DNA from: Macrostomum lignano
Taxonomy: Eukaryota
Direction of reading: 5' to 3'
DNA length: 28,511 nt
NCBI GenBank assembly: GCA_002269645.1
Contig: NIVC01005015.1
Coordinates: 1-28,511, forward strand
The first letter of the stretch is position 1; each line of letters opens with the position of its first letter. This document shows positions 1,807 through 21,861 of this stretch, piece by piece. Below the pieces are notes generated by a model. That model made no database searches, was not told the origin of the DNA, and saw only the letters and a list, made by a program, of their open reading frames with translations. The position numbers and the translations under genes were made by a program.

Positions 1807-1883
1807 CTAATCAGAGTATCAAGCATTGGAACACATAACATATACATATACAGCACGGTGAATTTACATATAGTCGTAACAGA

Positions 1884-2702
1884 TGTTGTATCCCTGCAGC
1901 CCCCGGCCCGGCAGTAGGGTGGTCCTACAGGGTACAGTACAATCGGGTCCTTGCTAAGCCTGCGCGCGGGCGCTAGGGCGAGCACTTCCCTTGACAGTCT
2001 GGGGCGTCAGGACGCACCCACGCAGCCTTCCCACGCGTCGGGACGCAGTGGTGAGGGCCGCCTTCAGCGAGGCGTCGGGACGCACTGGCTGGCGTAGAGG
2101 CGTACGGTAGGTATCCTACTGCCGTATAAACCCCAACTAGCTGAGTCGGCGTCCGGACACACGGACTCTCTGCCCCCTAGGCAACCGAAAGAACGAAGAC
2201 AGGACGCGCACTTACTTAGTTGGCAGCTGTCGCTCAGGGCTCAGGAAGATGGCCTTCTTTGGTGTATTTCTTTATCAAAGTGGGTCTGTATAACTTGGGC
2301 TGTTTAACTTGGGCTGTAGATAGCTCTGACGAAGAACCACGTGCACGGAGAGGGGACAGTCGAGACGCGCACCGCTCCAACCCGCCGCGAGCGATGTTAA
2401 ATAGCACACGCCCGCGGAGGGGGAGGGCCACGCGCTCTCAACCCCACCACCCCACCAACCCCCAGCCAACCCCCCCCGGGGCCGGCCACCAAGCCCGCCG
2501 CCGGCTCAGCCAATCACCACGCGACTGGCTGGCCGCGACCAATCGCCACGCAGGGCGAGCAAACAAATGCCAAAACTTAAGCCTCTGGCTGCGGCAACGC
2601 AAAAAGGGGGGTGAATAACAAAAACTGAAAACAACTAGTTGAGGGGTGACTCAGCCCGCTGGGGCTAGGTGCACAGGCCCCGCAAAAGTGCACAACACAA
2701 CA
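1884..2702 (-). repeat. 3' LTR (819 bp)
   Basis: Direct repeat of 10031-10853. Manual alignment gives 3 substitutions and 5 indels, all in homopolymer runs. Confidence 0.97.
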
Positions 2703-2713
2703 CCCCGCCTCCC
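2703..2713 (-). other. Polypurine tract (GGGAGGCGGGG) preceded by a U-rich tract (TTTTGTT)
   Basis: Immediately 5' of the 3' LTR on the minus strand. Confidence 0.85.
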
Positions 2714-3521
2714 AACAAAAGGAAGAAGCTCATACGAGCCAGTAACGCTGATTACAGAAACAAATGACAACGAATGACACCACAGCTGCACAACCTGCAC
2801 CGCACATGGGCAAGGGGTTCAAAGGCTGCTTGACCTACATGACTGACAACACGCGTACATTAAATCGATGGGGTTGAACACGAAATAAAACAACCAGATG
2901 AACCAATGATGACAAAAGGAATTAACGTGTGATGCCACAAAAATTCGACCATTGACGACGCAAAAAAACTTGACTGCTAATGACGCAAAAAGATTTATGG
3001 AATTCTGACACCAATGATTTAACGATGAACGACACAAAAGAGTTTAATGATAAATGATTAGAGCTAGTCACTGTTCTCCACCGCACCGTCCCTGTGCTAA
3101 TCCTTGCCGAGTCGGCTGCCCTTTCTCCGTTGACTCTCGACACCTCGCCTGGGTCCGGGGTTCCGGCGCTGGCGTCGGCGTCACCAGAATTAAGCTTCAG
3201 CCCGGTGACTGCTTGGCGTCCGCTGGAACCCGCCTGGCCTGGGACCATCACTTCAGTGGAGGACGCCGCTGCTTCTCACCCGGCCGCCGCTATTGCTGTC
3301 CACTCTGGACGACCAGGTGCTTGCCAATCGTGCGCCTCCCGCCTCCAGTCTCCCGGCTGCCCCTCTACCTAACCCTCATACCACCCATACGGTAACCCAA
3401 CTGCATACGACTAACACGGAAAATACGATACACCCAACCCCCGCACCAGGGACAGGGAAACGAACAACCGGACACGCCCGACAGGGCCTGCACCCCCAGC
3501 CCAGCCCACACTCACACCCTA

Positions 3522-4505
3522 CTAGCACTCGCACGCCACCACACGAGCACAACAGCGCAGCAGCGCCTGGACCTGGCCCGCACCTAGCAGCTCGAACCGA
3601 GGGATCACCACCTTCCGCATCACTCGAGCTGCTCGCTTTAAACATTCGCGTTTCCAACCGCTCCGACGACCGCGTCCCTTGGACCACGTCACTGAAATGT
3701 CCCGGCGCAGAAACTTGAGCACTTGAAGTGTCACCGCCGTCAGATAACGCCTCGGCTCTTCTCGCCGCACCCTAAACAGGTCAGCCAGCTCCTCAAACAC
3801 GTTTACGATCTCTTCCTCCTCGCCCTTCAGCAATGCCGTTCTCAGACTCCGGCGCAGCTCCACAAATCTCGTTGTGCTCGGTAACGGTAGCTCCTCCATC
3901 TCGACTGTCGTCGCCCCGACCGGTACCAGCTTCCAAGCCTCGACATCCGGCAGGTCCTCCCCGTCTGTCTCCATCTCTCCGACCTGGTCTGTTTCGTCGT
4001 CGCTGATAATGATGCAGTAGCCGCTGTCTGGCGCATAGCTTCGCTCGAATGACTGACGAAAACCCTGCTCCTCGGCCTCCCAGCCGGGCGGCCGACTTCC
4101 GTCGCTGACGGCCGACTCACTGTCGGTATCCCCGGGTTCGTCGTCTCCACGGAAGGCGTCCGCATCCGACTGCTCGTCCTCACTCGGCATGTCCTCATCT
4201 TCCAGCCTGATCGCTTCCAGGATGTCCTCTGGCACGGGAATGTCTGACGGGGGTTGAACCTGTCTAGCCAACTCTACCGCCCCGCTGAACGAGATTGACG
4301 AATCACCGTACATGTCATACAACCACCGCCGAAATGGGCACCCGAGAATTTCATACGCGACGTTGAGGGCTTTGCATTTCTCTTCTGCGAATGCCCGGTC
4401 CGGGTGCTTGTCCGGGTGATACTTCAGGGCTAGCCGCCGATAGGCTCTCTTGACTGCAGTTGCCTCCACCCCCTGGTCGATCTCCAGTTCGTCGTACAAG
4501 GACAT
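3522..4505 (-). CDS. Retrotransposon-encoded J-domain (DnaJ/Hsp40-type, class C-like) protein, 327 aa
   Basis: aa 2-67 (LYDELEI...AVKRAYRRLALKYHPDKHPD...AEEKCKALNVAYEILGCPFRRWLYDMYG) match the J-domain consensus, with the HPD motif intact. Followed by an acidic region and a basic, helix-like C-terminus. Intronless, uninterrupted, ends in tandem TAG TAG, and lies inside the LTRs on the sense strand. Confidence 0.93.
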   Translation of the reverse strand: MSLYDELEIDQGVEATAVKRAYRRLALKYHPDKHPDRAFAEEKCKALNVAYEILGCPFRRWLYDMYGDSSISFSGAVELARQVQPPSDIPVPEDILEAIRLEDEDMPSEDEQSDADAFRGDDEPGDTDSESAVSDGSRPPGWEAEEQGFRQSFERSYAPDSGYCIIISDDETDQVGEMETDGEDLPDVEAWKLVPVGATTVEMEELPLPSTTRFVELRRSLRTALLKGEEEEIVNVFEELADLFRVRREEPRRYLTAVTLQVLKFLRRDISVTWSKGRGRRSGWKRECLKRAARVMRKVVIPRFELLGAGQVQALLRCCARVVACEC

Positions 4506-4530
4506 CTACGGAGTGCCGTTTCTTGCCGTT
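4506..4530 (-). promoter_or_regulatory. Candidate splice acceptor directly before the J-ORF ATG
   Basis: Minus strand reads TTTTAAC (branch-like)...CACTCCGTAG|ATG. The pyrimidine tract is weak. Confidence 0.45.
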
Positions 4531-4623
4531 AAAATCGCATTTTCCGCTACTAAACCTGGTCCGTGTGCCTTCCGACTCATCCACCCGCTACAACCACCTA
4601 ACCGCCGACAACCCCCAACCCGT

Positions 4624-5784
4624 TCAGAACCTCAGCCGATCCGGCGGTCGCCTGTGCCGAGTCGGATATCTCCTGGTGGTGAGAGTCTCCGCTGCGGGCG
4701 CTTCTAGTCCTTTCCATTCTTCTGGTGGATCGGGTCCTTCCCATTCTTCCGGCAGGCCACTTTGAGGCGACTCCGAGCTTCTCACGCTACCACCGACCTC
4801 GTTCTCCAGTCCTTGCTCGACCTCCGCTGGTGGTGGTCGACCACGTCGGCCTACCTGCTCAGCTTCCTCCTCTTCATCCTCTTGGCTCTGCACGTCCTCT
4901 GTCACCGCACCTCCTTCCTCCTGGCTCGCTTCGTTCGCCGCTGACCTCGACTTCTTATAAGGCGACAGGTTGTTGAAATGTACTCTTTTGGTCCTCCTTG
5001 GATTAGCCGGATTCTGAACTTCGTACACGGTCTCGGAAATCTTCCGCACCACTTCAACTGGTCCCTTCCAATCGACCCGGAACTTGTTCGGCACCTCCCC
5101 CGGCTTGGCTGGCACGAACACAAAAACTAGGTCCCCGGGTTGGTGCGCGGATCCACGTACTTTCCTGTCGTAATAGTCCTTCTGCAACTTCTGGTATGTG
5201 CCGGTCGCTCGTCGCACTGCTTCATGTGCTTGATGGAGGTGCTTTCTCAAGCCGGCCACGTACGTTGACTCGTCCAGCGGCTCTTGTGGTGTTTTGTAAG
5301 CTACATCCAGTGGTAATCGCATCTCTTGGCCGTGCAGGAGGAAGTACGGTGTGTAGCCAGTGCCGCGATGCACACTTAAACGGTACGCCATCAAGGCTGA
5401 GTCGATTAGTTCATCCCATTTGTGTGACTCTGCTCCCTCAGCGATGTAGCTTCGCAGTACTGACTTCAACGTCTGATTGAACTTCTCCACCTGCCCATTT
5501 CCACTTGGATGGTAGGCCGTGGTTCTGGTTTTCTGGATTTTCAGAAGCGTGCACAGCTCTCGCATTACTCGAGACTCGAAGTTCCGCCCTTGGTCACTGT
5601 GAATCGAACTCGGGCAACCGTAGATACTAACCCAGTGCCCAAATATGGCGCGCGCCACTGTTGATGCTCGTTGGTTGCGGATCGGGATCGCTGCCGGCCA
5701 TTTAGTGAACGCATCCTGCAGCGTTAAGATGTACTGATGACCTCTGGCACTCCTTGGCAACGGCCCGACAATGTCCACCATCAC
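4624..5784 (-). CDS. Integrase catalytic core and C-terminal part of pol
   Basis: DDE motif (VDIVG, SDQG, QVEKF), GPY/F-like WKGPVEVV, and terminal RRYPTRHRRPPDRL. No chromodomain seen. Disconnected from the upstream pol by the inverted duplication at 5773-5869. Confidence 0.95.
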   Translation of the reverse strand: MMVDIVGPLPRSARGHQYILTLQDAFTKWPAAIPIRNQRASTVARAIFGHWVSIYGCPSSIHSDQGRNFESRVMRELCTLLKIQKTRTTAYHPSGNGQVEKFNQTLKSVLRSYIAEGAESHKWDELIDSALMAYRLSVHRGTGYTPYFLLHGQEMRLPLDVAYKTPQEPLDESTYVAGLRKHLHQAHEAVRRATGTYQKLQKDYYDRKVRGSAHQPGDLVFVFVPAKPGEVPNKFRVDWKGPVEVVRKISETVYEVQNPANPRRTKRVHFNNLSPYKKSRSAANEASQEEGGAVTEDVQSQEDEEEEAEQVGRRGRPPPAEVEQGLENEVGGSVRSSESPQSGLPEEWEGPDPPEEWKGLEAPAAETLTTRRYPTRHRRPPDRLRF

Positions 5785-5869
5785 TCTCTCAAAAGGTTCG
5801 CCCGTTCGAATCGGCTCTCCACTGGAGCCGATTCGAACGGGCGAACCTTTTGAGAGAGTGATGGTGGAC
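5773..5869. repeat. Perfect inverted repeat (45-bp arms, 7-nt loop) from a local inverted duplication inside integrase
   Basis: GTCCACCATC...TCGGCTC / TCCACTG / GAGCCGA...GATGGTGGAC. The native integrase peptide PLEPIRTGEPFERVMVD appears on the plus strand (ORF 5771..6061). Confidence 0.95.
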
Positions 5870-6451
5870 TCTAGCCTTCTTCGCCAACTTCGAGCGGCCG
5901 CAGACTTCGCAGCTCCTTACGCTCTCGGCGATCTCGCGGCTGATCCCGGGTCTCCAGAACCGTGCAAGGACCTTTCGCTTTGTCTTCTGCAGGCCGAAAT
6001 GGCCGCCCGCCACGCCACTATGACAGTCGATCACAATCCTCTGCAGCAGACTCTGTGGTAGCACAATCTGGTCCGCGCCTTTCCACCTCCGCACCAATAT
6101 TCCGCCGTCCACCTTGAGCTGCTCGCACTGCGCCATGAGCGCTCTGCCCCCTGGGGTCCATCTCAGCTTCTCGCTCACGCTCTCATTTCCGCTGACCAGC
6201 TCTTTCATCCATCGAATCTCGTCTTCCGCGTACTGCGCTTTTACCAGTTCATGTCGCTCGTCAGCCACGTTCAGCGCACTCACACCATTTGAGATCACTG
6301 GTGCAAAATCTGAGCAGGATGGAAATTCTAGGAAGCCTGCATGTCGCCGGGTCTGCCGTCTTGACAACGAATCCGCATTTCCGTGACAGAGCCCGCTGCG
6401 ATGCACCACGTAGTAGTCGAATTCTGCCAGCTTTTCCAGCCACCTAGCACA
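5870..6451 (-). CDS. End of RNase H, connection and integrase HHCC zinc-binding domain
   Basis: In frame with 6452..8899 after a TAG: CARWLEKLAEFDYYVVHRSG...HGNADSLSR...HSGVAGGHFG...CEVC. Confidence 0.9.
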
Positions 6452-8899
6452 CTAACCTTCTGGATCCTTCAGATTTTGAATCCACTTCAAGTTGTTGTGA
6501 TCCGTTCGCAAGCAAAATCTTCTTCCAGCCAGATAGTACCGATACTTGACCATGAACGTCACCACCGCCAGCAGCTCTACTCTGGTCGTGCAATAGTTCC
6601 GCTCTGCCGATGACAACGATCTTGAGCCATACGCGATAACCTTCTCACTTCCGTCCACTTGCTTCTGAGACAACACGGCGCCAATGCCAATAGATGAGCT
6701 CGCATCCGTGTCAAGAATGAACTCGCCGGCCTCGGGTCCAAAATCCGGAAACGCCATCACGTCTGTACTCGTCAGCCGCGCTTTCAAGTCCCGGAACGAT
6801 CGCTCTTCGTCCGGTCCCCACTCAAACTCGACACCTTTGCGAGTCAACCTGAGCAGCGGCTCGGCAACACTCGAGAAGTTTTTGATAAATCGGCGATAAT
6901 AGCTGCACAATCCCATGAACGATTGCACGTCTCTGGTGTTCTTCGGTTGGGGCCAGTTTCTGATCACTTCGACCTTCTCACTCTCCGTCTCCACTCCCGC
7001 CTCCGACACCTGATGGCCCAGGAACGTTACCTTCTTCATCAGAAAATGACACTTCTCTGGCTTCAACTTCACTCCAGCCTTCCGCAGCCGAATGAACACC
7101 TCTTCTAACCTTTCCAGATGCTCGTCAACCGTCTTGGACCACACGAGGATATCGTCCAGGTAGATTAAGCATGTCTTCCAGGCCACGTCGCGCATTGCTA
7201 GAGCCATCAGCCGCGTGAAAGTTGCAGGGCTATTGACGAGTCCGAACGGCATCACTTTCCACACGTACTGACCCTTCAGAGGCACCGAGAAGGCCGTCTT
7301 GAGTTGATCCTCTAGTCTTAATTTCACCTGCCAGTAGCCGCTGTGGAGGTCCATCGAGCTGAACACTCTGGCTCCCGCCAGTTCGTCCAACGCATCATCC
7401 ATCCTCGGCAACGGAATTGCATCTCGTGTCGTTACTTTATTCAAACCACGGTAGTCTACACACATCCGTAAGCTGCCATCCTTCTTGCGTACACAAACGA
7501 TTGGCGCGTTCCAAGGAGACTGTGCTGACTCAATGCGTCCCTGCTCTTCTAGCTCATCCACGAGAGCATGCACTTCTTGCCTAAGGTGCGGGGGCAGCCT
7601 CCGTGGCGGGATGTTGACCGGCTTGGCCTCTCCAGTGTCGATCTGGTGCTCCACCAAGGGTGTCACACCCAACTGTGCTGAGTCCGTCGCGAAAAGATCA
7701 CCGTACGAGTCGACTAAGTCCTTAAACCGCTGGCGCTGCCTCTCAGTCGTCATTCCGTCACCCCACTTGCCGAGCTTCTCCCAAACTTTGTCCTCTTCGC
7801 GTTCCTCGGCCTTATCTGTCCTGCTGAGACGTTCCTTTGAATTACTTTGCAACGCCGCGATCCTTGGCTGCTCTTCCAGTTCCAGCGGTCGATACCAGCC
7901 AACAGCCTCTCCTCGCCGCAACCGCACCGGTTGCTCTGATAGGTTGCAGACACAAACCACAATCTTTCCGTTCTCATCTGGGGTCACAAGCGTTCTCGCG
8001 GCAACCACTCCAGTTCCCTTGAGGTGCTTCAACGGATCCATCATTCCTGCTACTCGGACATTTCGACCTCCCCTCGTATCCAGTCGACCGAGCAGAACCG
8101 CCTCGTGGCCTGGTTTAACCGTTGCTGTATCATTCAGGCGAATCCGGCACACCACTGGTCGCTCTCGTTGGAACCGGATCGGAAGCACTACATTCCTGAG
8201 TCGCAGCTCTGCTCTGGCGTAATCGATTTGGCAGCCATGCCGTTGCAGAAAGTCCGAACCCAGCACGAGGTCGTAACCAATCCCTGCCACCACCAGCACG
8301 TCGATCGGCACGCTCTCATCCATTTCTAAGTCCAACGTGGTGACACCAATCACCTGAATGGGACTGCCATTTGCAGTTGTGACTTTGGCGAATGGCCCCC
8401 GGAAAAGCTCTGGTTTGTACCGCAACCACGAGAACATCGCCTCCGACATGATGGTACACGAAGCTCCCGAGTCCAACAGCGCTGACACGTGATTATCTTT
8501 GGCAATCTTTATACTCACATAGACTGATGTCGGGACGATGTTGATGGTGGCCTGTGAAATACTCGGCTTCGGGACAGTGCTAGATGCTCGAGTCAGTGAT
8601 GTCGCAGCCGGTGCAAACGTCGATGAAGCAGCAGGTGCGACGGTTGATGACGCAACAGGTGGGACGATTGATGACGCAACAGGTGGGACGATTGATGACG
8701 CAACAGGTGAGACGGTTGATGATGCAATAGGTGGGACGACTGATGACGCAACAGGTGAGACGATTAATGACGCAACATGTGGGACGATTGATGACGCAAC
8801 AGATGGGACGACTGATGACGCAACATGAGAGACGATTGATGATGAGTTAAATGACGCCTGATCCCTTTTCCTCGACGGCTCCATTTGGGGGCGTTTCAT
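6452..8899 (-). CDS. pol: aspartic protease, reverse transcriptase, RNase H
   Basis: LLDSGAS (PR), CVDYRGLN and YLDD (RT), ILDTDAS...AERNY...ELLAVV (RH). Ends at a premature TAG in PEG*CARW, where PEGQxARW is typical. Confidence 0.97.
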   Translation of the reverse strand: MKRPQMEPSRKRDQASFNSSSIVSHVASSVVPSVASSIVPHVASLIVSPVASSVVPPIASSTVSPVASSIVPPVASSIVPPVASSTVAPAASSTFAPAATSLTRASSTVPKPSISQATINIVPTSVYVSIKIAKDNHVSALLDSGASCTIMSEAMFSWLRYKPELFRGPFAKVTTANGSPIQVIGVTTLDLEMDESVPIDVLVVAGIGYDLVLGSDFLQRHGCQIDYARAELRLRNVVLPIRFQRERPVVCRIRLNDTATVKPGHEAVLLGRLDTRGGRNVRVAGMMDPLKHLKGTGVVAARTLVTPDENGKIVVCVCNLSEQPVRLRRGEAVGWYRPLELEEQPRIAALQSNSKERLSRTDKAEEREEDKVWEKLGKWGDGMTTERQRQRFKDLVDSYGDLFATDSAQLGVTPLVEHQIDTGEAKPVNIPPRRLPPHLRQEVHALVDELEEQGRIESAQSPWNAPIVCVRKKDGSLRMCVDYRGLNKVTTRDAIPLPRMDDALDELAGARVFSSMDLHSGYWQVKLRLEDQLKTAFSVPLKGQYVWKVMPFGLVNSPATFTRLMALAMRDVAWKTCLIYLDDILVWSKTVDEHLERLEEVFIRLRKAGVKLKPEKCHFLMKKVTFLGHQVSEAGVETESEKVEVIRNWPQPKNTRDVQSFMGLCSYYRRFIKNFSSVAEPLLRLTRKGVEFEWGPDEERSFRDLKARLTSTDVMAFPDFGPEAGEFILDTDASSSIGIGAVLSQKQVDGSEKVIAYGSRSLSSAERNYCTTRVELLAVVTFMVKYRYYLAGRRFCLRTDHNNLKWIQNLKDPEG
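8603..8842 (-). repeat. 24-bp coding minisatellite, about 10 units of SSxVxPVA, upstream of protease
   Basis: Plus-strand unit approximately GACGATTGATGACGCAACAGGTGG; translated SSIVSHVA SSVVPSVA SSIVPHVA ... SSTFAPAA. Confidence 0.92.
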
Positions 8900-8948
8900 G
8901 ACCTCCGGGGCTCACTTCCCCCACTGCGGGCCCCGCTCTCCATTTCCC
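8884..8948 (-). promoter_or_regulatory. Candidate -1 ribosomal frameshift signal at the end of gag
   Basis: G GGA AAU heptamer in the gag frame (8948-8942), a 6-nt spacer, then potential H-type pseudoknot stems CGGGGC/GCCCCG and UGGGGG/CCCCCA. Confidence 0.65.
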
Positions 8949-9873
8949 TCCGATCTACACTTGGCAGCCACGTGACCAAGTTTGCCACACCGGTGGGACC
9001 GAATGCCGCGTCCCGCTTGAGCTCCTTGGTGCGGACCTCCGGCTTTCTTCGGACAACGGTTCGCCATGTGCCCCTTCTCATGGCAATTCCAACACTCCAC
9101 ATCGCTCTGTTGATTCGCTGGTGGTGGTCTCTGAGAACTCTTCCCTCCGCCGGATCCTGACGCCTGACTCTGCCGTAGCTGCCGTTCCAGCGCCTCGATC
9201 CTGGCCCGCAGGGCGCCGACGTCCTCTTGATTTGCCTCCCCGGCTGCGCCCACAGCGTTGAAAGCCGCCGTCTTGCCTTGTCCCGGCTGCCCCACGTGAG
9301 CCGCTCGAATTGCAGCGTCCAGCTGACGGGCACTCCTGATCGCAGCAGCCAGACTCTCCGGCTGGCTAAGAAATACTTTCTCCCGGACTGGCTCGGCTAC
9401 TCGCACAACTTCATGAATCGGTCCTTGGCCAGCTCCGACCTCGCGTCCTGATCAATCGTCGGATAGGCGTTCCGGACTATCTCGAGCAGGGCGTCACCGT
9501 AGGCCTCCATCGACTCCTTCTGGTCTTGGTCCCGTCCCGCCAGCTCCAATCTGAAGTCTTGCGGAGTCCGATGCTGCGTGAACCTGTTCAGCAGATGTTC
9601 AGTAAACTCCTCATACTCCAAATCATCCGCCAGATTAAGGTTGTCCACCGCGATATACGCTGTGTTGAGATCCAGCAGACTCATCAGATGTGGCCTTCGA
9701 TCCGCTTCTTCAATCCCAGTCGCCTCACAAAATTCGTTGAAACTCCTCAACCACAGGCGAAAATTCATTCCAGTCACATACTTAACTGGCTTCGCAACTC
9801 TTGGAGGCCCATGGTTCAAATTCTCGCGCAGCCTGTCCGTCAGCGCACCAATCAGGTCATCGATACCCGCCAT
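8912..9873 (-). CDS. gag, split by a 1-nt frameshift near 9405
   Basis: Capsid-like region (FRLWLRSF...FRLELAGRDQ...ESMEAYGDAL...KDRFMK) continuing as RVAEPVREKV.... Zinc knuckle CWNCHEKGHMANRC plus a second knuckle SHRCGKLGHVAAKC whose first Cys is TCC (Ser) at 8998-8996. Confidence 0.92.
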
Positions 9874-9960
9874 TGGTCACAGTAAAACCACAAGCCGCCG
9901 ACTGCACTGGCACAATTAAGCGACTCGACTCGAAGCTCGATCCAGAACTCGACACGAAGA

Positions 9961-9966
9961 ACTCAC
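9961..9966 (-). promoter_or_regulatory. Candidate leader splice donor GTGAGT between the PBS and the gag ATG
   Basis: Exact GTGAGT hexamer, the same as host-gene donors in this window, with no ATG between the PBS and the donor. Confidence 0.45.
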
Positions 9967-10009
9967 TACCCTCAACACAACACACCCAGAAAAACTACAG
10001 GCAAAGCAG

Positions 10010-10027
10010 GTCCCTGTTTGGGCGCCA
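10010..10027 (-). other. Primer-binding site, tRNA-Lys(UUU) type
   Basis: TGGCGCCCAAACAGGGAC, 3 nt from the 5' LTR. It is a 17/18 match to the tRNA-Lys3 PBS TGGCGCCCGAACAGGGAC. Confidence 0.9.
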
Positions 10028-10030
10028 ATT

Positions 10031-10853
10031 TGTTGTATCCCTGCAGCCCCCGGCCCGGCAGTAGGGTGGTCCTACAGGGTACAGTACAATCAGGTCCTTG
10101 CTAAGCCTGCGCGCGGGCGCTAGGGCGAGCACTTCCCTGACAGTCTGGGGCGTCAGGACGCACCCACGCAGCCTTCCCATGCGTCGGGACGCAGTGGTGA
10201 GGGCCGCCTTCAGCGAGGCGTCGGGACGCACTGGCTGGCGTAGAGGCGTACGGTAGGTATCCTACTGCCGTATAAACCCCAACTAGCTGAGTCGGCGTCC
10301 GGACACACGGACTCTCTGCCCCCTAGGCAACCGAAAGAACGAAGACAGGACGCGCACTTACTTAGTTGGCAGCTGTCGCTCAGGGCTCAGGAAGATGGCC
10401 TTCTTTGGTGTATTTCTTTATCAAAGTGGGTCTGTATAACTTGGGCTGTTTAACTTGGGCTGTAGATAGCTCTGACGAAGAACCACGTGCACGGAGAGGG
10501 GACAGTCGAGACGCGCACCGCTCCAACCCGCCGCGAGCGATGTTAAATAGCACACGCCCGCGGAGGGGGGAGGGCCACGCGCTCTCAACCCCACCACCCC
10601 ACCAACCCCCCAGCCAACCCCCCCCCCGGGGGCCGGCCACCAAGCCCGCCGCCGGCTCAGCCAATCACCACGCGACTGGCTGGCCGCGACCAATCGCCAC
10701 GCAGGGCGAGCAAACAAATGCCAAAACTTAAGCCTCTGGCTGCGGCAACGCAAAAAGGGGGGTGAATAACAAAAACTGAAAACAACTAGTTGAGGGGTGA
10801 CTCAGCCCGCTGGGGCTAGGTGCACAGGCACCGCAAAAGTGCACAACACAACA
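10031..10853 (-). repeat. 5' LTR (823 bp)
   Basis: Direct repeat of 1884-2702, adjacent to the PBS. Confidence 0.97.
10543..10804 (-). promoter_or_regulatory. Putative U3 promoter of the 5' LTR
   Basis: AP-1-like TGACTCA 10798-10804, two CCAAT boxes (10690-10694, 10661-10665) and TATA-like TATTTAA 10549-10543. Motif matches only. Confidence 0.4.
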
Positions 10854-10910
10854 CAGATGAGCATTTAGAAGAAACTTGAATCCGTCTTTCCTTGATAGGA
10901 AGGTTCAGCA

Positions 10911-10932: not shown

Positions 10933-13900
10933 TGGTTAAAGCGAGATGACTGGGCTTGGCTGGCGGCCTGTCGCTCAGATTTGGTCGCGGTCGATAAAAC
11001 GCTTCAAGCGGTCGTGGTGGCCCATCAAATGGCGCCTGCCGTTCACAGCCTGCAGCCTGTAGTTCACAGGGCCGACTGTTTAAGGACGATGAACGGGCCG
11101 GACCACCGGTTCCACAGCGACTTGCACTGGCCGCGCTTCATCGCATGGTGCGTCAGCATCACTCGATCACCGGTCTAGAAGTCGGCAGTCTCGGCCCCTA
11201 GACTGTAAAACTCGTGCTGCGCCCTCTGGGCCGTGTGCAGGTGCGCCCGCACTACCTGGAAGCCTGATTCTCGTCTGCAGGTCTGCGCCGTCCTGCGGCT
11301 GTTCGCGCTGCCCACCGAGTGCCAAGTCAATTGGCAGTCTGGGCTCCATGCCGCGTAGAACCTTGAACGGCGACTCGCCCGTGGAGCCGTGCTCAAAGCT
11401 GTTGTGGGCCCCACACGACGTAGGGCAGCAGGGCGTCCCAGCCGGCCTGGTTCTTCGAGCAGAATGCAGAGAGCATGTTGCCCAGCGTCTTATTGAACTT
11501 CTCGACGTTCCCGTTACAGCTGCGGTGAAACGGTGAGGTCCTCGATTTTTCTGTTCCGAGCAGTGCGCAGGTTTGCTTGAAAACTTTGGCCTCGAACTGG
11601 CGACCTTGGTCCGAGTGCACGACCTCCGGAACCCCTTGCCGCAGCACCACACAGGTCACCAGAGCCTCGGCGACCGTTTTGGCGTCAATCTGCATGTCTG
11701 AGGGCCGCCGCCTCCACCCACTTTGAAAGCGTACATGAAATGTATCAACAAAGCAGAGGATGTAGCGCTTGCCTCACTCGGTGGCTGGCAGCGGGCCCTA
11801 CCAGCTGGGGGATCACCGATGGAGCAATGCGCCGACCGGTGACAGCGTCAGACAGGGCAGCAGCTTCTGGACCGACGCACTCACCGTCACTGGGAATTGA
11901 AAGCTGGGCTGGAGCATCGCGTATCAAACCGCGAGTAGAACCTGGTCCTGGTCCTGCTCGTCAGGCAGATTAGCGATCTGAAACTGCACCGCCGCTGCTC
12001 GGCTGAGGGTGTCTGGCACGATGTTCTCCTTGCCGAGCCGGTACAGGATCTCCACAGGGGGAACTTCTGAATGAGCTGCAGCCAACGTACCGGCTGACGG
12101 ATTGGCTCCTTCGCGTTGAGCAGCCCAGTGATCGTCTTGTGGTCGGTGAACACCTGGATCTTGCAGCTGTTGCTCAGGTACATGCGGAACTGCTTGAGAC
12201 TCTAAACAATCGCGGGCAGCTCCCGGTCCGTGGTGCTGTAGTTGCGCTCTGCCTTGCTCAGCGTCCGGGAAGCGTAGGCCACTGGCAGCTCCTGGCCGTC
12301 GCGCTCCTGGCTGAGCACCGCACCCAAGGCCACAGCACTGCTGTCACAGCTGATGACGATAGGCCGGCTGAAGTCGGGCAGCTGGAGCACCGGGGCCTGG
12401 GTCAGCGCGTCCTTCAACTTGTTCAGCGCCGCAGCATGCTCTGACGTCCACATGAAGCCGCCGCCCGCGCCTTTCTGAGCCAGGTGATGCAACGGTTTGG
12501 CGATGTCAGGGGAGTTGGGCACGAACCTGCGGTAGAAGCTGAGCATGCCGATGATGCGCCGGACGCCCTCCTCGGACTGCGGCTCCGACATCCGCCTGAT
12601 CGCCTCGATCTTCTTCGATCGAGTTGCCGCTCTCAGAGACTTGATGGCCCAGGTACGCGACGCTCCGGTATGCGAAGAAGCCTTGCCCGGGTTCAGCTTC
12701 AGCTTGGCATACCGCAGTCGATGCAGCACCCTGGACAGTGACTGAACGTGGCTCTCAAAGTCCCTGTTAAAAATGATCAGGTCATCAATGTACGCGATGA
12801 CCTCCTCCCAGCTCAGGCCGGTCATGATGAGCTCCATCATTTGCTGGTAGGTCGCAGGAGCGTTGCACATGCCGAATCCTGTTTTGCGGAATTGCATCAG
12901 GCGCTCGGTTTAGAACACTGTCAACGGCCGATCCTCCTCTCTGACCTCCACCTAAAGGAAGACTTGCGCATGTCGATGGTAGAGAACCATGAGCAGCCAA
13001 GGAGTCGAGCGCCTGGTGCAATTTCGGTACTACGACGGCACCCTGAACTCTGGCGATGATCACTGTGGGAACCAAGCAACAGGACAGCGGGCCATCTGGC
13101 TTGGACTCGCAATTACTGAACGGAACCGCGTCACCATCGAATCCGACTGTCTTGGCACCCTGGTCGATGCTGAACTGCGATCTGGCCGCCTTGCTCACGA
13201 AATCTGAGCGAATCCCTCTGACCATCAGCCCCATTTGTCTGCGCAGATGATGACCGAGTCGCACCGTAATGCTCACGCTTCCCAACAGCTCGATAACGGA
13301 GTCGTCCACGGACACATGCCTGACATCTGCCGGCTTCAGCTCGTAGCGACCGTCCAGCTCTCTCAAGGCAACGTCGCTGATCAGCGAGGTCTGCGCTCGG
13401 GTGTTCAGCAGCCAACGGCGCAGCTTGCTGTTTGCCTCTCTAGCCAGGAATAAAAATCGCTCGGGAAGCACGGGATTGCTCCTTGGGGTTGGTGTAGGTC
13501 CCGCACCCGTTGCACCAACCCTTAGGAGTTTCCCAGAACCTTCGATGGACAGACTGAGGCTTTGTGTCCTCGCCCCGAGCACTTGTGGCAGATGATCTGG
13601 TCCGGCTGTTTATAACGCTCCTGACATTGCGCTGCACGGTGTCCGAGATGGCCGCAGTTGAAGCAGCCGCCTTCTCGCTGCTGACGACACGCCGAGTGTC
13701 AATACCGGACTGCACGCCGACCCTTCATGATGATGAGCTCGTCCATGCGTTTCTCCAGTCAGTCCAGGCGATCCTCGCCCGGTCCCGCTGCTGATGTAGC
13801 GCCGATGGCTCCGAATGCCGTCACCGACTGTCGCCGAGCGAGCTCCCCCAGCAGAGCCGCCCACTGCAGCAGAGTCTCCAAACTGCAGGTCTCTGCGTCC

Positions 13901-14450
13901 TCTGCCTTGAGCAGCTGCAGAAGTTTGAAGCGCATATCTAGATCTCGCTGAGAAACTGAATCACTCGACCTGGCATTCTGGTGCAGCAGCTTTAGGTTGA
14001 AACAGAGCTCATGGAGCGTCTCCGAGTCTTCACGCTTTTTTGAGTAGAAGTCGTTCATAGCCTCAAAAGCTGTGTGATTCACCTCCGTAAAACTTTGTGA
14101 GGTCCTCTTTGATACTATTGAAGCTCTTCTGCCTTGTCTCGGTGAGGTCCCAGACGACAAGTTGGGCTTCTCCCGTGAGCAGCAGCTTCACCTTTGATGC
14201 TAGGGTCGCGTCATCCCATTTCCCATCGTTGGCGAATTCCTCGAAGATGCATAGCAGATGCCGTCTGTTCCACTGAACTTTGGCAGTAGCAGGGTGTTCT
14301 AGGCCATTAGTGCACTTGCACTGGGTTCTCGCTGACACCAGTGTAAGCCGAGAAATTAGATCAATTCATGAAGTATATTTGGAATGCATGATTACTAAGG
14401 GGCGCGATTATAGAGTCAGCGATAGAATGGTTAAAATGACTCGATCACCC
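10933..14450 (-). mobile_element. Older, degraded Ty3/gypsy element of a different family (gag, PR, RT, RH and IN remnants)
   Basis: Gag WDDATLASKVKLLLTGEAQ. Degenerate PR LLNTRAQTSLIS. RT GFGMCNAPATYQ...YIDD. RH CDSSAVALGAVLSQ...AERNYSTTDRE. IN HSDQGRQFE...NVEKFNKTL. Many frameshifts, stops and deletions. No PPT or recognisable 3' LTR. Confidence 0.92.
14332..14340 (-). other. Probable PBS of the degraded element (TGGTGTCAG, tRNA-Leu type)
   Basis: Follows ...CTTACA C, an LTR-end-like CA, and lies about 30 nt before the gag-like ATG. Only 9 nt match. Confidence 0.55.
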
Positions 14451-14811: not shown

Positions 14812-16011
14812 CATTTTCCCAGCCAGTGGCGCCACCGCCGCCACCAGCAGCCAGCAGCAGCAGCCGGTCGCCCGTCCGGTACACGAAGCTGCTGCCGCCT
14901 CCGCCGCCTCCTTCGCTGCTCAGGGAGGTCGAACCGCCCATCTGGCCCACAACAATGCTCAGCTGGACTCCGGCCGTCAGATTGACTCTGGCGCTCACCT
15001 TTACTCCTGGGCCTCCGATGGTGTTCTTCATAGTGTTGTTGCCCCCTCTGGCTCCGGCAGCCTCGATCAGGTAGCAGCCGCTAGCGGGAGCCGTGAAGGT
15101 TTCGATCGATCCGTTTCTGCCCGAGCTGCTGTCTGCAGGGGTTCATAATGATAAAATTATAATATTTTATTGCAACTGCGCCAATGGGCAGCTATTGTGC
15201 GGCGCATCTGAAGGCTGCGTACGGCTGTTCAGTCCAAGGACTGGGGGTCGCCACACACACCCTCAATTACCCCAGCTAATGCTGGCACCCATTTTACAGC
15301 TGGGTGAACTGAAGCAATGCAGAGTTAAGTGTCTTGCTCAAGGACACAAATGGTTCTGAGTGAGTCGAGAACCCCCGACCTTTCAGTTGTGAGTTCGATG
15401 CTCTAACCACTAGGCTGCAACCCGTTTTAGGGGTTTATGCAGTGTCATATATAACTGTATTAAGAAGCTTTGATTGCAACTATTGTCACAGACATTTTCA
15501 AATTTCTATATCTCGTGACTCACTTCTCAGGAGACCCCCAGTTGACGTCAAACTCATCAAGTGCTGCTCAAATTCTTCCACTTTCCACAAAGTCACAGCG
15601 CTGTCGTCGGGCGAGCCGAGCTGTCTCGTCACGTGACTCCCGTTTAGGCCGGCAGGCTGCCCTGATGACTCATTGCTGAGGCTGACTGCCCGACAGACTC
15701 TGGCGGTCTTGTTCAGCTCGGCGACAGCGCAGCCTCGGAGCTGGCACAGCAGCAGGCAATGGCTTTCCCGAGCGACGTCGGTCTCGACGAACAAGCTGCT
15801 CACAGAGTCACTCAGCTCAACGGAGCCGTCGGTGACGAATCGACTGAAGCGTTTGCCACTTCCAGCGTTGGTCACTGAAATTCAATATATAATTTACAAG
15901 CATATGAAGGCTTTTGTTTTGCACCAGAGCACCCGACCTTACTTGTACTGAAGCTCTATACTCACCGTTAAATAAAATGAACACAATCGCTAAAATGAAT
16001 TCCGCCTGCAT
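14812..16011 (-). CDS. Host gene A exons 1-3 (16011-15966, 15874-15524, 15132-14812). Secreted protein: signal peptide, PAN/apple-like Cys module, ALK/LTK-type glycine-rich domain; about 401 aa with exon 4
   Basis: All introns are GT-AG and phase 1. Exon 2 (351 nt) and exon 3 (321 nt) preserve frame. Hydrophobic N-terminus MQAEFILAIVFILFN. CLLLCQLRGCAVAELNKTARVC resembles the PAN Cys spacing. IETFTAPASGCYLIEAAGARGG...IVVGQMGG...GGGGGSSFV...LLLAAGGGGG is the glycine-rich domain signature. Confidence 0.85.
15146..15420 (-). mobile_element. tRNA-derived CORE-type SINE in intron 2 of gene A
   Basis: A-box-like CCTAGTGGTTAGAGC and a degenerate B-box. Central GTGTCCTTGAGCAAGACACTTAACTC...CAGCTGTAAAATGGGT resembles the MIR/CORE domain. 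AT-rich tail. Confidence 0.7.
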
Positions 16012-16450: not shown

Positions 16451-17039
16451 TGGGGAAATTTTTAGTAGTTAGTTGGGTTGATTATGGCCAAAACAGAAGC
16501 CCGCGTAGCACACGATTTCTTCTTCTTACATTAGATTGGTTAGAAGAAGAAAAGAATGCTTTTTCTTACAATTGGCAATTATTTCAGCCTGCTCTCTCTT
16601 TTGAGCTGCGGTCATTGATGTTTGTTTTTACCATAGAAGGCGGCACCGTTTTTTGAGCATTGCCCCACGCGTCTATGGTAAAGAAACATTTCTGTGAAAT
16701 AGTTCGTCTTTTTTATTTGATTTATTCTTGCAAGATTGACCTTTCTATGATTTAACTGCATGACCTATGATTGAAATAGAATAAAAATGATTTTTTGCTA
16801 TAGAATTGCCCGTTAGCGTTCTACTACTGTATTACAGAATCGCTCCATTATTTCAGCACAGTGAGTGTGCGTGGATTTGGCCACAGACGAAAACGCATGA
16901 TGTGAAGGCGGAGTCGGGACTCGCCGGGATAGTGGAGTTAGAGGCAGTGGTAGGTTGTGTCACAGACGAAACTGATGAACAAGCGTGGGGCCTAAAAGAA
17001 GATGGAGGGAGGGCTAGCTAGGAAGACAGACAAGCAGAC

Positions 17040-17043
<4 letters not shown>

Positions 17044-17129
<86 letters not shown>
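17044..17129. repeat. (GA)n microsatellite
   Basis: About 85 bp of interrupted GA repeat. Confidence 0.95.
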
Positions 17130-21215: not shown

Positions 21216-21861
21216 CGTCCAGCATCTCTGCCAACGTCCTGCATCTCTGCCCACGTCCTGCATCTCTACCAGCGTCCTGCATCTCTGCCAATGTCCTGCA
21301 TCTCTCCCAACGTCCTGCATCTCTGCCAACGTCCAGAATCTCTCCCAACGTCCAGCATCTCTGCCAACGTCCTGCATCTCTGCCAACGTCCTGCATCTCT
21401 GCCAACGTCCAGAATCTCTCCCAACGTCCTGCATCTCTGCCAACGTCCTGCATCTCTGCCAACGTCCAGAATCTCTGCCAACGTCCTGCATCTCTGCCAA
21501 CGTCCTGCATCTCTGCCAACGTCCTGCATCTCTGCCAACGTCCTGCATCTCTGCCCACGTCCTGCATCTCTGCCAACGTCCAGAATCTCTGCCAACGTCC
21601 TGCATCTCTGCCAACGTCCTGCATCTCTGCCAACGTCCTGCATCTCTGCCCACGTCCTGCATCTCTGCCAACGTCCAGAATCTCTGCCAACGTCCTGCAT
21701 CTCTGCCAACGTCCAGAATCTCTCCCAACGTCCTGCATCTCTGCCAACGTCCTGCATCTCTGCCAACGTCCTGCATCTCTGCCAACGTCCTGCATCTCTG
21801 CCAACGTCCTGCATCTCTGCCAACGTCCTGCATCTCTGCCCACGTCCTGCATCTCTGCCAA
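21216..21861. repeat. 19-bp minisatellite (CGTCCTGCATCTCTGCCAA), about 34 copies
   Basis: 646 bp divided by 19. Three units give the 19-aa periodicity seen in the six overlapping ORFs. Confidence 0.97.

What the first reader, a model, noticed from the sequence alone, without database searches (positions are those of the whole stretch)
3522..4505. Ty3/gypsy retrotransposon carrying an Hsp70 co-chaperone (J-domain) gene in the env position
Seen: an intact, intronless 327-aa ORF with a full J-domain and HPD motif, on the sense strand between the integrase stop (4624) and the PPT, inside a TSD-bounded element with near-identical LTRs. It therefore moved as part of the element. Established: J-domains recruit and stimulate Hsp70 through HPD; polyomavirus T antigens use a J-domain to direct Hsc70 to host complexes; closteroviruses encode their own Hsp70 homolog; errantiviruses carry env at this position. 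Inference: this lineage encodes its own adaptor to direct host Hsp70 to VLP assembly or uncoating, or to disassemble silencing complexes. I do not recall a described gypsy lineage with this cargo, but I cannot check that here.
Basis: partly seen in the sequence, partly recalled or inferred. Interest (0 to 1): 0.92.

Follow-up and report, generated by a model that had tools for sequence, protein, structure and literature searches.

The report
Flatworm gypsy retrotransposon carrying J-domain gene
A gypsy-type retrotransposon of the flatworm Macrostomum lignano carries, after its integrase, its own intact gene for an Hsp70 co-chaperone (a J-domain protein), and diverged relatives keep the same gene in the same place, so it looks like a selected accessory gene of a kind I could not find described for retroelements.

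Summary
Window 3522-4505 (minus strand) is an intact 327-aa ORF with a complete J domain (Pfam DnaJ, E=9.5e-17; HPD at residues 30-32). It lies between the integrase stop and the polypurine tract of an 8,970-bp Ty3/mdg4 (gypsy) element. The element has 99.6%-identical LTRs, TG..CA ends, a tRNA primer site and a 4-bp target duplication (CAGA). The host is Macrostomum lignano.

The ORF is not a one-off capture. Seven further lineages carry a homologous ORF, two of them in M. lignano. Wherever upstream sequence exists (5 of 5 other loci), an integrase lies just upstream on the same strand. All seven members whose N-terminus is available keep HPD. The spacers and 3' regions are unconserved, and pN (0.32-0.51) is below pS (0.67-0.79). 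The C-terminal 125 residues form a confident, basic helical domain with no relative outside this family and no fold match. A splice-acceptor-like YAG abuts the start codon in most lineages, and a GTGAGT donor sits between PBS and gag, which suggests a spliced env-like mRNA.

This copy's gag and pol are broken (three breaks). Hsp70 recruitment is a strong inference; the client is unknown. I found no prior description. Verdict: new variant of a known kind, interest 0.72.

The parts
1880..1883 (.). Target-site duplication, CAGA (flank next to the 3' LTR)
   Evidence: Same 4 nt at 10854-10857.
1884..2702 (-). 3' LTR (819 nt), TGTTGT...ACAACA ends in element orientation
   Evidence: 99.6% identical to 10031-10853: 3 substitutions and 4 indel events in homopolymer runs. 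No heat-shock element, even with one mismatch allowed.
2703..2713 (-). Polypurine-tract-like GGGAGGCGGGG directly upstream of the 3' LTR
   Evidence: Read from the sequence.
2714..3521 (-). About 0.8 kb non-coding stretch between the ORF3 stop and the PPT
   Evidence: No similarity by blastn or tblastx to the corresponding stretches of L001, L007, L008 or L009.
3522..4505 (-). ORF3: intact 327-aa J-domain protein, class C architecture
   Evidence: Homologues at 27-45% identity in seven other lineages.
4308..4505 (-). J domain (residues 1-66), HPD at residues 30-32
   Evidence: Pfam DnaJ E=9.5e-17. pLDDT about 90. Foldseek and phmmer hits to solved J domains of DNAJB2, DNAJC5 and DNAJB1.
3903..4175 (-). 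Acidic, disordered, length-variable linker (residues 111-201)
   Evidence: pLDDT below 50. 26 D+E against 5 K+R, pI 4.1. Poorly aligned among relatives.
3525..3902 (-). Family-specific basic all-helical C-terminal domain (residues 202-327) with an exposed invariant G-R-R..W loop (SKGRGRRSGW in the window)
   Evidence: Modelled alone: pLDDT 85, pTM 0.79. pI 10.1. Invariant columns R218, L221, G228, P251, Q261, R268, D269, G279, R280, R281, W284, C319. No Pfam, PDB-sequence, PDB-fold or BFVD-fold match. Only 6 clusters among 1.84 billion representative proteins.
4506..4623 (-). 118-nt spacer between the integrase stop and the ORF3 ATG; its last 3 nt (tag, 4506-4508) are a splice-acceptor-like YAG and an in-frame stop
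   Evidence: YAG abuts the ATG in the window, L001, L002 and L009. AG ends one base before the ATG in L007. ttgttgcag lies 17 nt upstream of the ATG in L090. The rest of the spacer is unconserved.
4624..8899 (-). pol (protease, RT, RNase H, integrase zinc-binding, core and C-terminal domains, in that order); broken by one in-frame stop and one frameshift
   Evidence: Pfam RVT_1 1.3e-37, RT_RNaseH 2.9e-27, gag-asp_proteas 1.4e-8, Integrase_H2C2 2.6e-15, rve 9.7e-10, Integrase_p58_C 2.7e-8. Breaks counted against the intact 1254-aa pol of L007.
8912..9873 (-). gag with a CCHC zinc knuckle; broken by one frameshift. One stop codon separates it from pol in the same frame
   Evidence: Pfam zf-CCHC 2.9e-7. 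The 316-aa gag of L007 aligns in two frames, 68% and 40% identity.
9961..9966 (-). GTGAGT, a consensus 5' splice-donor hexamer between PBS and the gag ATG (candidate major donor)
   Evidence: The same hexamer lies 5 nt after the PBS and upstream of gag in L007.
10010..10027 (-). Primer-binding site TGGCGCCCAAACAGGGAC, 3 nt after the 5' LTR
   Evidence: L007 has TGGCGCCCGAACAGGGAC at the equivalent place.
10031..10853 (-). 5' LTR (823 nt)
10854..10857 (.). Target-site duplication, CAGA (flank next to the 5' LTR)

Best explanation
The window holds a recently inserted copy, now coding-defective in gag and pol, of a Macrostomum lignano Ty3/mdg4 (gypsy) LTR retrotransposon. Its lineage carries a third gene after pol. 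The product is a class C J-domain protein. It has an N-terminal canonical J domain, an acidic disordered linker, and a basic all-helical C-terminal domain found only in this family.

Shown: the gene lies inside the LTR and target-duplication boundaries. It is conserved in position, orientation and reading frame across eight diverged lineages. It evolves under constraint while the flanking non-coding DNA does not.

Strongly inferred: the HPD loop and helices II and III engage host Hsc70/Hsp70 and trigger its ATPase, as in all J-domain proteins.

Inferred from conserved signals: the protein is made from a sub-genomic mRNA. That mRNA would be spliced from a GTGAGT donor in the leader to a YAG acceptor abutting the start codon, or the flatworm spliced leader would be trans-spliced onto that acceptor. 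ORF3 has its own AUG, is in a different frame from pol, and is preceded by an in-frame stop.

Speculative: the basic C-terminal domain, with its invariant exposed G-R-R..W loop, selects the client. The likeliest client is the element's own ribonucleoprotein or Gag assembly, so host Hsp70 would be brought in to assemble, remodel or disassemble it.

My confidence by step: accessory gene of the lineage 0.9; Hsp70 co-chaperone 0.8; spliced or trans-spliced expression 0.55; own RNP or Gag as client 0.3.
For: Element anatomy.

J domain: Pfam E=9.5e-17. Fold match to solved J domains at rmsd 1.1-1.8 A. Nearest solved sequences are DNAJB2, DNAJC5 and DNAJB1, E 1e-14 to 1e-13. HPD is at the same position in all seven members that have an N-terminus. 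None has a G/F region or a CxxCxGxG zinc finger.

Family: a profile of the C-terminal domain, searched against 1.84 billion representatives, finds only six clusters, E 1e-13 to 1e-70. These are P0001, P0002, P0241, P0242/P0245, P0243 and P0244. An unannotated intact copy lies in M. lignano assembly contig NIVC01001446.1 (L090; DnaJ E=1.2e-12).

Linkage: an integrase lies directly upstream on the same strand in L002 (58% identical to the window's integrase), L007 (intact 1254-aa pol, ORF3 83 nt after its stop), L008, L090 and P0244.

Grouping: (window, L002, L007) and (L008, P0244) group together by both integrase and ORF3 similarity.

Constraint: pN 0.32-0.51 against pS 0.67-0.79 in all ten pairs. 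Spacer and 3' regions have no detectable similarity.

Sister elements without ORF3: L003 has only about 270 nt between the integrase stop and the 3' LTR. The family HMM finds nothing in L003-L006.

Expression signals. Trans-splicing is common in this host: 39% of transcripts, and 7% of transcriptional units encode two or more proteins (PMC5730564).

Host identity: a window ORF is 100% identical to M. lignano UniRef A0A1I8I4L8.
Against: No RNA or protein evidence was available, so expression and the splice model rest on sequence motifs alone. In L090 the acceptor-like site is 17 nt upstream of the ATG rather than abutting it.

This copy's gag and pol carry three breaks. From that break density about 0.56 breaks would be expected in ORF3, so an intact ORF3 in this copy alone is not significant (P about 0.57, my arithmetic). 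The case rests on the cross-lineage comparison.

dS is saturated, so dN/dS is only semi-quantitative.

A neighbour-joining tree on 158 integrase columns does not recover ORF3-bearing elements as one clade. P0133/L090 groups nearer the ORF3-less elements. Either the tree is weak, or there were losses or more than one gain.

The C-terminal domain has no homologue or fold match, so nothing points directly to a client.

Copy number in the M. lignano genome could not be measured with these tools.
Confidence: 0.55

Rival explanations
1. ORF3 is a Rev/CERV-like RNA-handling regulator. The basic C-terminal domain binds the element's unspliced genomic RNA, and the J domain uses Hsp70 to remodel that RNP for nuclear export or packaging, rather than acting on Gag shells.
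For: The C-terminal domain has pI 10.1 with 27 K+R in 126 residues. It has an invariant, exposed arginine-rich loop, G-R-R..W, of low pLDDT between two helices. If the element splices, its unspliced RNA needs an export solution. Cer1, another Ty3/gypsy element, encodes CERV from a spliced mRNA for exactly this purpose (PMC10309623).
Against: No RNA-binding family or fold was matched. There is no sequence similarity to any known export factor. Basic charge alone is weak evidence.
Confidence: 0.2
2. ORF3 manipulates the host rather than serving the element's own particles. It would divert or titrate Hsp70 away from small-RNA silencing machinery, or alter control of the heat-shock response, to favour element expression.
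For: A phage-encoded J-domain protein acts on the host heat-shock regulator through DnaK (PMC3486835). In M. lignano several LTR retrotransposon families are driven by heat-shock elements, so the Hsp70 circuit matters to elements in this host (PMC12801592).
Against: This element's own LTRs contain no heat-shock element, even with one mismatch allowed. Nothing in the C-terminal domain resembles a known partner of Argonaute/Piwi or HSF.
Confidence: 0.15
3. ORF3 is a passenger: a host DNAJ fragment transduced once and carried without benefit. Alternatively, in some loci it is a domesticated host gene that merely sits beside retroelement debris.
For: In L090 only the integrase part of pol remains upstream of an intact ORF3. 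P0244 is annotated as a cellular 'J domain-containing protein'. In the window copy ORF3 is intact while gag and pol are broken.
Against: The ORF is open in seven of the eight loci read as DNA (only L008 is disrupted), from lineages only 27-45% identical in protein. The arrangement is the same in each, and pN is below pS. Integrase linkage holds at every informative locus. The window copy sits inside 99.6%-identical LTRs with a target duplication. No cellular protein shares the C-terminal domain. P0244 is a 3375-aa chimeric gene model that also contains protease and integrase pieces.
Confidence: 0.07

Closest known systems
Env-bearing Ty3/gypsy elements (errantiviruses) and other gypsy lineages with a third ORF, e.g. 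bdelloid rotifer Juno/Vesta elements with GDSL-lipase, DEDDy-exonuclease or env-like ORF3 (PMC5408684)
   Same: An extra sense-strand ORF between pol and the 3' LTR that is specific to a lineage. It was acquired from outside the gag-pol core and is presumably expressed from a spliced message.
   Different: The cargo is a J-domain co-chaperone with no signal peptide or transmembrane segment. None of the ORF3 types listed in that survey, or in the plant additional-ORF review (PMC7264820), is a J domain; both papers have zero occurrences of DnaJ or J-domain.
CERV of the C. elegans Ty3/gypsy element Cer1 (PMC10309623)
   Same: A non-env accessory protein of a gypsy element, encoded by a spliced sub-genomic mRNA and acting on the element's own RNA or Gag pathway.
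   Different: No sequence or domain relationship. CERV has no J domain. Splicing is only inferred from motifs here.
Polyomavirus T antigens (N-terminal J domain with HPD)
   Same: A mobile or viral genome encodes its own N-terminal J domain and fuses it to a targeting module, so that host Hsc70 works on a chosen complex (established knowledge; cited in PMC10410713, reference 50).
   Different: Different genome type. No LxCxE motif in six of seven family members, including the window. No helicase or origin-binding domain. The client here is unknown.
Rki, the J-domain protein of the T4-like phage RB43 (PMC3486835)
   Same: A small, orphan, element-encoded J-domain protein consisting of a J domain plus a unique C-terminal part, which works through the host Hsp70.
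   Different: Bacterial virus with DnaK and sigma-32 as targets. No homology outside the J domain.
Cellular class C (type III) J-domain proteins; the nearest solved J domains are DNAJB2, DNAJC5 and DNAJB1
   Same: Canonical four-helix J domain with HPD and the basic helix II.
   Different: No G/F region, zinc finger or DnaJ_C client-binding domain. The C-terminal domain is found only next to gypsy integrases.
Catalogued M. lignano LTR retrotransposons (Mag, CsRN1, Gmr1/Osvaldo, Mdg3/Micropia clades; PMC12801592)
   Same: Same host and same superfamily. Domain order PR-RT-RH-IN and a canonical CCHC gag.
   Different: That study does not mention any J-domain or additional ORF. Its heat-inducible families carry heat-shock elements in the LTR, and this element has none. 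I could not assign this element to one of their clades or family numbers, because no reference sequences were available.

Membership tests
Ty3/mdg4 (gypsy) LTR retrotransposon | Two long terminal repeats with TG...CA ends, flanked by a short target-site duplication | tested here: met
   819 and 823 nt LTRs, 99.6% identical, TGTTGT...ACAACA ends, CAGA duplication.
Ty3/mdg4 (gypsy) LTR retrotransposon | PBS next to the 5' LTR and a polypurine tract next to the 3' LTR | tested here: met
   TGG-initiated 18-mer at 10010-10027; GGGAGGCGGGG at 2703-2713. The matching tRNA was not identified with the tools. From memory it is a tRNA-Lys type; this was not tested.
Ty3/mdg4 (gypsy) LTR retrotransposon | pol domain order protease, RT, RNase H, integrase (integrase last) | tested here: met
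   Order of the Pfam hits along the minus strand. This also argues against the Gmr1 arrangement, in which integrase precedes RT (my recollection of that arrangement).
Ty3/mdg4 (gypsy) LTR retrotransposon | Uninterrupted gag and pol (autonomous copy) | tested here: not met
   Gag has 1 frameshift; pol has 1 in-frame stop and 1 frameshift. The family is still gypsy; this copy is simply defective.
J-domain protein (Hsp40/DNAJ), class C | J-domain fold (four helices) above the family threshold | tested here: met
   PF00226, 61.3 bits against a cut-off of 27.8. Foldseek probability 1.00, rmsd 1.1-1.8 A to solved J domains.
J-domain protein (Hsp40/DNAJ), class C | HPD tripeptide in the loop between helices II and III | tested here: met
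   Residues 30-32. Conserved in all 7 members that have an N-terminus.
J-domain protein (Hsp40/DNAJ), class C | Absence of the class A/B modules (G/F region, CxxCxGxG zinc finger, DnaJ_C) | tested here: met
   No other Pfam domain. 2 G+F in residues 71-110 and no CxxCxGxG.
J-domain protein (Hsp40/DNAJ), class C | Stimulates the ATPase of a partner Hsp70 | not testable with these tools
   Inferred from the conserved motifs only.
Errantivirus-type env gene | ORF after pol, on the sense strand, before the PPT | tested here: met
   ORF3 at 4505-3522, between the integrase stop (4624) and the PPT (2713).
Errantivirus-type env gene | Signal peptide, transmembrane anchor, fusion-glycoprotein homology | tested here: not met
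   Maximum hydropathy 1.22 over 19 residues. Acidic linker. Only DnaJ in Pfam. No BFVD fold match. It is not an env gene.
Errantivirus-type env gene | Expression from a spliced sub-genomic mRNA | tested here: inconclusive
   Donor and acceptor consensus sites are conserved in position, but no transcript data were available.

The most novel reading that the evidence does not exclude
A clade of flatworm gypsy retrotransposons has long encoded its own Hsp70 co-chaperone. It is made from an env-like spliced or trans-spliced message. Its private C-terminal domain directs the host's main chaperone to the element's own RNP or capsid, or against a host control system. That would make it the first retroelement-encoded J-domain protein. 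It would also link element biology directly to the heat-shock system, which other LTR retrotransposons of the same host are already known to exploit through their promoters.
Probability: 0.35. Interest if true: 0.85.

Novelty: new variant of a known kind. Interest (0 to 1): 0.72.

Why it matters
LTR retrotransposons are usually thought to borrow host chaperones. Here a lineage encodes the specificity-determining half of the Hsp70 machine itself, as polyomaviruses and one phage are known to do.

The gene has been kept across lineages whose copies are now only about 30% identical. That implies a lasting benefit, and it provides a natural handle on which step of the retroelement cycle is limited by chaperone activity.

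The host is a laboratory model. In it, other LTR retrotransposon families have independently acquired heat-shock promoters, so the finding adds a second, protein-level link between retroelements and the heat-shock system in one genome.

The C-terminal domain is a new, confidently folded helical domain with no known relatives.

Practically, automatic annotation currently labels such ORFs as cellular 'J domain-containing protein' (UniRef A0A1I8G8I7) or leaves them unannotated (L090). DNAJ gene counts in flatworm genomes may therefore be contaminated by retroelement copies.

Tried and rejected
1. A metagenome scan with alignment A2 returned only generic bacterial J domains, because one search pattern was the HPDK motif. 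Alignment A4 was too diverse for that tool.

2. A viral-contig scan with the C-terminal alignment found nothing.

3. Fold searches of the C-terminal domain against PDB and BFVD gave best E 0.2-0.6 and TM below 0.45, mostly designed helical repeats. I treat this as no match.

4. I looked for heat-shock elements in the element's LTRs, prompted by the M. lignano literature. There are none.

5. dN/dS from the closest pair, L008 and L009, was uninformative because their shared 780 nt are identical.

6. I tested whether the extra 50 nt that disrupts the J domain in L008 is an intron. It lacks GT..AG ends, so I treat it as an indel in a defective copy.

7. I tested whether this copy's frameshifts could be homopolymer assembly errors. 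The longest runs nearby are 3-4 nt, no more than background, so this is not supported.

8. Exact look-up of the window's ORF3 product found no record. Copy number in M. lignano therefore could not be estimated.

9. The supplementary tables of PMC12801592, which hold the family list, are not held as text. The element could not be matched to a published family number.

10. Clade assignment (Mag, CsRN1, Osvaldo and so on) could not be made, because no reference sequences are available in the tools.
Full report
WHAT IS THERE

The window contains an LTR retrotransposon on the minus strand, from 1884 to 10853 (8,970 bp, 57% GC).
- The LTRs are 819 and 823 nt. They differ by three substitutions and four homopolymer-length indels (99.6% identity) and end in TGTTGT...ACAACA.
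- The element is flanked by the 4-bp duplication CAGA.
- Three bases after the 5' LTR lies an 18-nt primer-binding site beginning TGG (10010-10027).
- A purine tract (2703-2713) abuts the 3' LTR.
- In element orientation the coding content is gag with a CCHC knuckle, then pol with protease, reverse transcriptase, RNase H and a three-part integrase, all above Pfam thresholds.
- After a 118-nt spacer comes the ORF of the finding, 4505 to 3522. It is 327 codons long, has no stop, and is in a different frame from pol.
- About 0.8 kb of non-coding DNA follows, up to the purine tract.

THE OBSERVATION

It is confirmed.
- Residues 3-64 match the DnaJ profile end to end (E=9.5e-17), and HPD is at 30-32.
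- The AlphaFold2 model of this part has pLDDT about 90 and superposes on solved J domains at 1.1-1.8 A.
- The nearest solved sequences are the J domains of DNAJB2, DNAJC5 and DNAJB1.
- One qualification concerns the rest of the element. Using the intact gag (316 aa) and pol (1254 aa) of relative L007 as guides, this copy's gag carries one frameshift and its pol carries one in-frame stop and one frameshift.
- A single stop separates gag and pol in the same frame. I could not decide whether that stop is the natural gag terminator.
- At that break density, about 0.56 breaks would be expected in ORF3. Its intactness in this one copy therefore proves nothing by itself (my arithmetic).

HOST

A neighbouring ORF (23196-23570, ALK/LTK glycine-rich domain) is 100% identical to Macrostomum lignano UniRef A0A1I8I4L8, and that protein maps at 98-100% identity onto 23238-24307. 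The window is therefore M. lignano DNA.

A paralogous copy of that gene (14864-15857 and 1404-1685) is interrupted by this element and by a second, heavily degraded gypsy-like element at about 11167-14338.

IS THE ORF PART OF THE LINEAGE OR A ONE-OFF?

This was the key test, and the ORF belongs to the lineage.
- A word-indexed search found two full-length relatives, P0001 and P0002, at 40-45% identity.
- I built a profile of the C-terminal 143 residues only, so that generic J domains could not swamp the search. Run exhaustively against 1.84 billion representative proteins, it found just six clusters, E 1e-13 to 1e-70: P0001, P0002, P0241, P0242/P0245, P0243 and P0244.
- P0244 is M. lignano UniRef A0A1I8G8I7, named 'J domain-containing protein'. 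It is a 3375-aa chimeric gene model. Its first 800 residues are protease, then the integrase C-terminus, then the J-domain ORF.

The contigs behind these proteins show the same synteny every time enough sequence is present.
- In L002 the ORF follows an integrase 58% identical to the window's.
- In L007, a 7-kb metagenome contig, gag and an intact 1254-aa pol are followed 83 nt later by an intact 264-aa J-domain ORF.
- In L008 an integrase C-terminus precedes the ORF.
- I also fetched the M. lignano genomic locus of a 46%-identical integrase (P0133, assembly GCA_002269645.1, contig NIVC01001446.1). About 600 nt downstream it holds an unannotated, intact homologue 293 aa long, with DnaJ E=1.2e-12 and 27-31% identity to all other members.

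That makes eight lineages, at least three of them in M. lignano, and integrase linkage at 5 of 5 informative loci besides the window.

Some related elements really do lack the gene.
- L003 has an LTR pair with only about 270 nt between the integrase stop and the 3' LTR.
- A family HMM finds nothing in the six-frame translations of L003 to L006.

CONSTRAINT

- All seven members with an N-terminus keep HPD at the same position.
- Seventeen columns of the C-terminal domain are invariant across all seven sequences aligned, including the N-terminally truncated P0243.
- The acidic linker varies freely in length and sequence.
- The integrase-to-ORF3 spacer and the region after ORF3 show no detectable similarity between lineages, by blastn or tblastx.
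- Nei-Gojobori proportions for all ten pairs are pN 0.32-0.51 against pS 0.67-0.79. dS is saturated, so the ratio is only a rough guide, but it is far from neutral.
- Integrase and ORF3 similarities group the lineages the same way: (window, L002, L007) and (L008, P0244).
- A caveat: a neighbour-joining tree on the 158 integrase columns shared by all does not make the ORF3-bearing elements one clade. P0133/L090 sits nearer the ORF3-less elements. Either the short alignment is weak, or there were losses or more than one gain.

THE PROTEIN

- AlphaFold2 on a seven-sequence alignment gives three parts: a confident J domain (1-66), a disordered acidic linker (111-201, pLDDT below 50, pI 4.1) and a confident all-helical C-terminal domain.
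- Modelled alone, the C-terminal domain has pLDDT 85 and pTM 0.79.
- It is basic (pI 10.1). Between two helices it carries an exposed, lower-confidence loop with the invariant G-R-R..W motif, SKGRGRRSGW in the window.
- It has no Pfam match, no PDB sequence match and no fold match in PDB or BFVD.
- There is no G/F region, zinc finger or DnaJ_C domain, so the architecture is class C.
- There is no hydrophobic segment, so it is not an envelope protein.

HOW IT IS PROBABLY EXPRESSED

- ORF3 cannot be a pol extension. It is in another frame, and a stop codon immediately precedes its ATG.
- That stop is tag, and the comparison is telling. The conserved start ATG is directly preceded by YAG in the window, L001, L002 and L009. 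In L007 an AG ends one base before the ATG, and in L090 ttgttgcag lies 17 nt upstream of it. Nothing else in the spacer is conserved.
- Four of six with AG in exactly that place has a binomial chance of about 2e-4 at 1/16 per site (my arithmetic). The lineages are related, so the point is retention rather than independence.
- A perfect 5' splice-donor hexamer, GTGAGT, lies between the PBS and the gag ATG in both elements whose leader is available, the window (9961-9966) and L007.
- This is the layout of retroviral and errantiviral env messages.
- M. lignano also trans-splices about 39% of its transcripts, and 7% of its transcriptional units encode two or more proteins (PMC5730564). Spliced-leader addition at the same acceptor is therefore an equally simple route.
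- No transcript data could be examined.

MECHANISM

- Shown: an element-borne, conserved, constrained J-domain gene.
- Strongly inferred from what J domains do: the product docks on host Hsc70/Hsp70 through HPD and triggers ATP hydrolysis, locking Hsp70 onto whatever the C-terminal domain holds.
- Speculative: the client. I favour the element's own RNP or Gag assembly. The domain exists nowhere but in these elements, which suggests co-evolution with an element-encoded partner, and it is basic.
- First rival: a Rev/CERV-like role on genomic RNA.
- Second rival: manipulation of the host's silencing or heat-shock control.
- Third rival: a passenger or domesticated gene. This last one is largely excluded for the lineage.

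COMPARISON WITH WHAT IS KNOWN

- Extra ORFs after pol are well known: env in errantiviruses; GDSL lipase, DEDDy exonuclease and env-like ORFs in bdelloid elements (PMC5408684); several types in plants (PMC7264820); CERV in Cer1 (PMC10309623). None of these is a J domain.
- Genome-encoded J domains are known in polyomaviruses and in phage RB43 (PMC3486835).
- A survey of about 280,000 J-domain proteins mentions no transposon, integrase or reverse-transcriptase association (PMC10410713).
- The M. lignano LTR retrotransposon catalogue lists 137 families in the Mag, CsRN1, Gmr1/Osvaldo and Mdg3/Micropia clades and describes heat-shock elements in some LTRs, but it mentions no J domain or extra ORF (PMC12801592).
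- Full-text searches for the combination found nothing.
- I could not check Repbase, Dfam or GyDB. An unremarked consensus containing this ORF may exist there.

VERDICT

It is a new variant of a known kind: an LTR retrotransposon with an accessory ORF, where the cargo and its private C-terminal domain are new. The function is unproven. Interest 0.72.

HOUSEKEEPING

This report gives each broken gene only as one span with counts.

Noticed in passing
window 18263-18370: A tight cluster of three perfect heat-shock-element triplets (GAAnnTTCnnGAA) plus two one-mismatch copies. None of 100 shuffles reaches three. It is outside the J-domain element, just 3' of the piggyBac-like remnants. M. lignano LTR retrotransposon families with such elements in their LTRs are published, so this may be a solo LTR or a heat-shock promoter.
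   Followed up: partly
window 8622-8842: A 24-nt tandem repeat (9.2 copies, 86% matches) lies inside the pol reading frame upstream of the protease. It encodes repeated octapeptides of the type (V/I)ASS(I/V)VP(P/H).
   Followed up: no
window about 11167-14338 (minus strand): A second, heavily degraded gypsy-like element (gag-like, protease, RT, RNase H and integrase remnants) abuts the 5' LTR of the J-domain element. It has no ORF3 remnant. Both elements lie between exons of one host gene copy.
   Followed up: partly
window 14864-15857 with 1404-1685, and 22729-24307: Two paralogous copies of an ALK/LTK glycine-rich-domain gene (UniRef name 'receptor protein-tyrosine kinase', M. lignano). Copy B is 98-100% identical to A0A1I8I4L8 and copy A is 83-91% identical. 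The segmental duplication is 84-97% identical at the DNA level.
   Followed up: partly
window 18732-20016 (minus strand): piggyBac-type transposase remnants (DDE_Tnp_1_7 E=5e-19; C-terminal zf-Tnp_2), split over several ORFs.
   Followed up: no
window 17036-17138, 21216-21861, 26356-27251, 27699-28184: An (AG)52 microsatellite and three long minisatellites (19 nt x 34, 21 nt x 44, 18 nt x 26). The 19-nt array is open in all six frames and produces spurious 200-300-aa ORFs.
   Followed up: no
L090 11684-12565 (M. lignano NIVC01001446.1): An intact J-domain ORF3 homologue, unannotated in the public assembly, sits behind an integrase-only remnant of pol and downstream of a very long 12-nt tandem array. 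It is a candidate for either a truncated element or a domesticated copy.
   Followed up: partly
P0244 (UniRef A0A1I8G8I7): A 3375-aa M. lignano gene model named 'J domain-containing protein' is a chimera of retroelement protease, integrase and ORF3 with unrelated downstream sequence. Retroelement ORF3 copies can therefore be counted as cellular DNAJ genes.
   Followed up: partly
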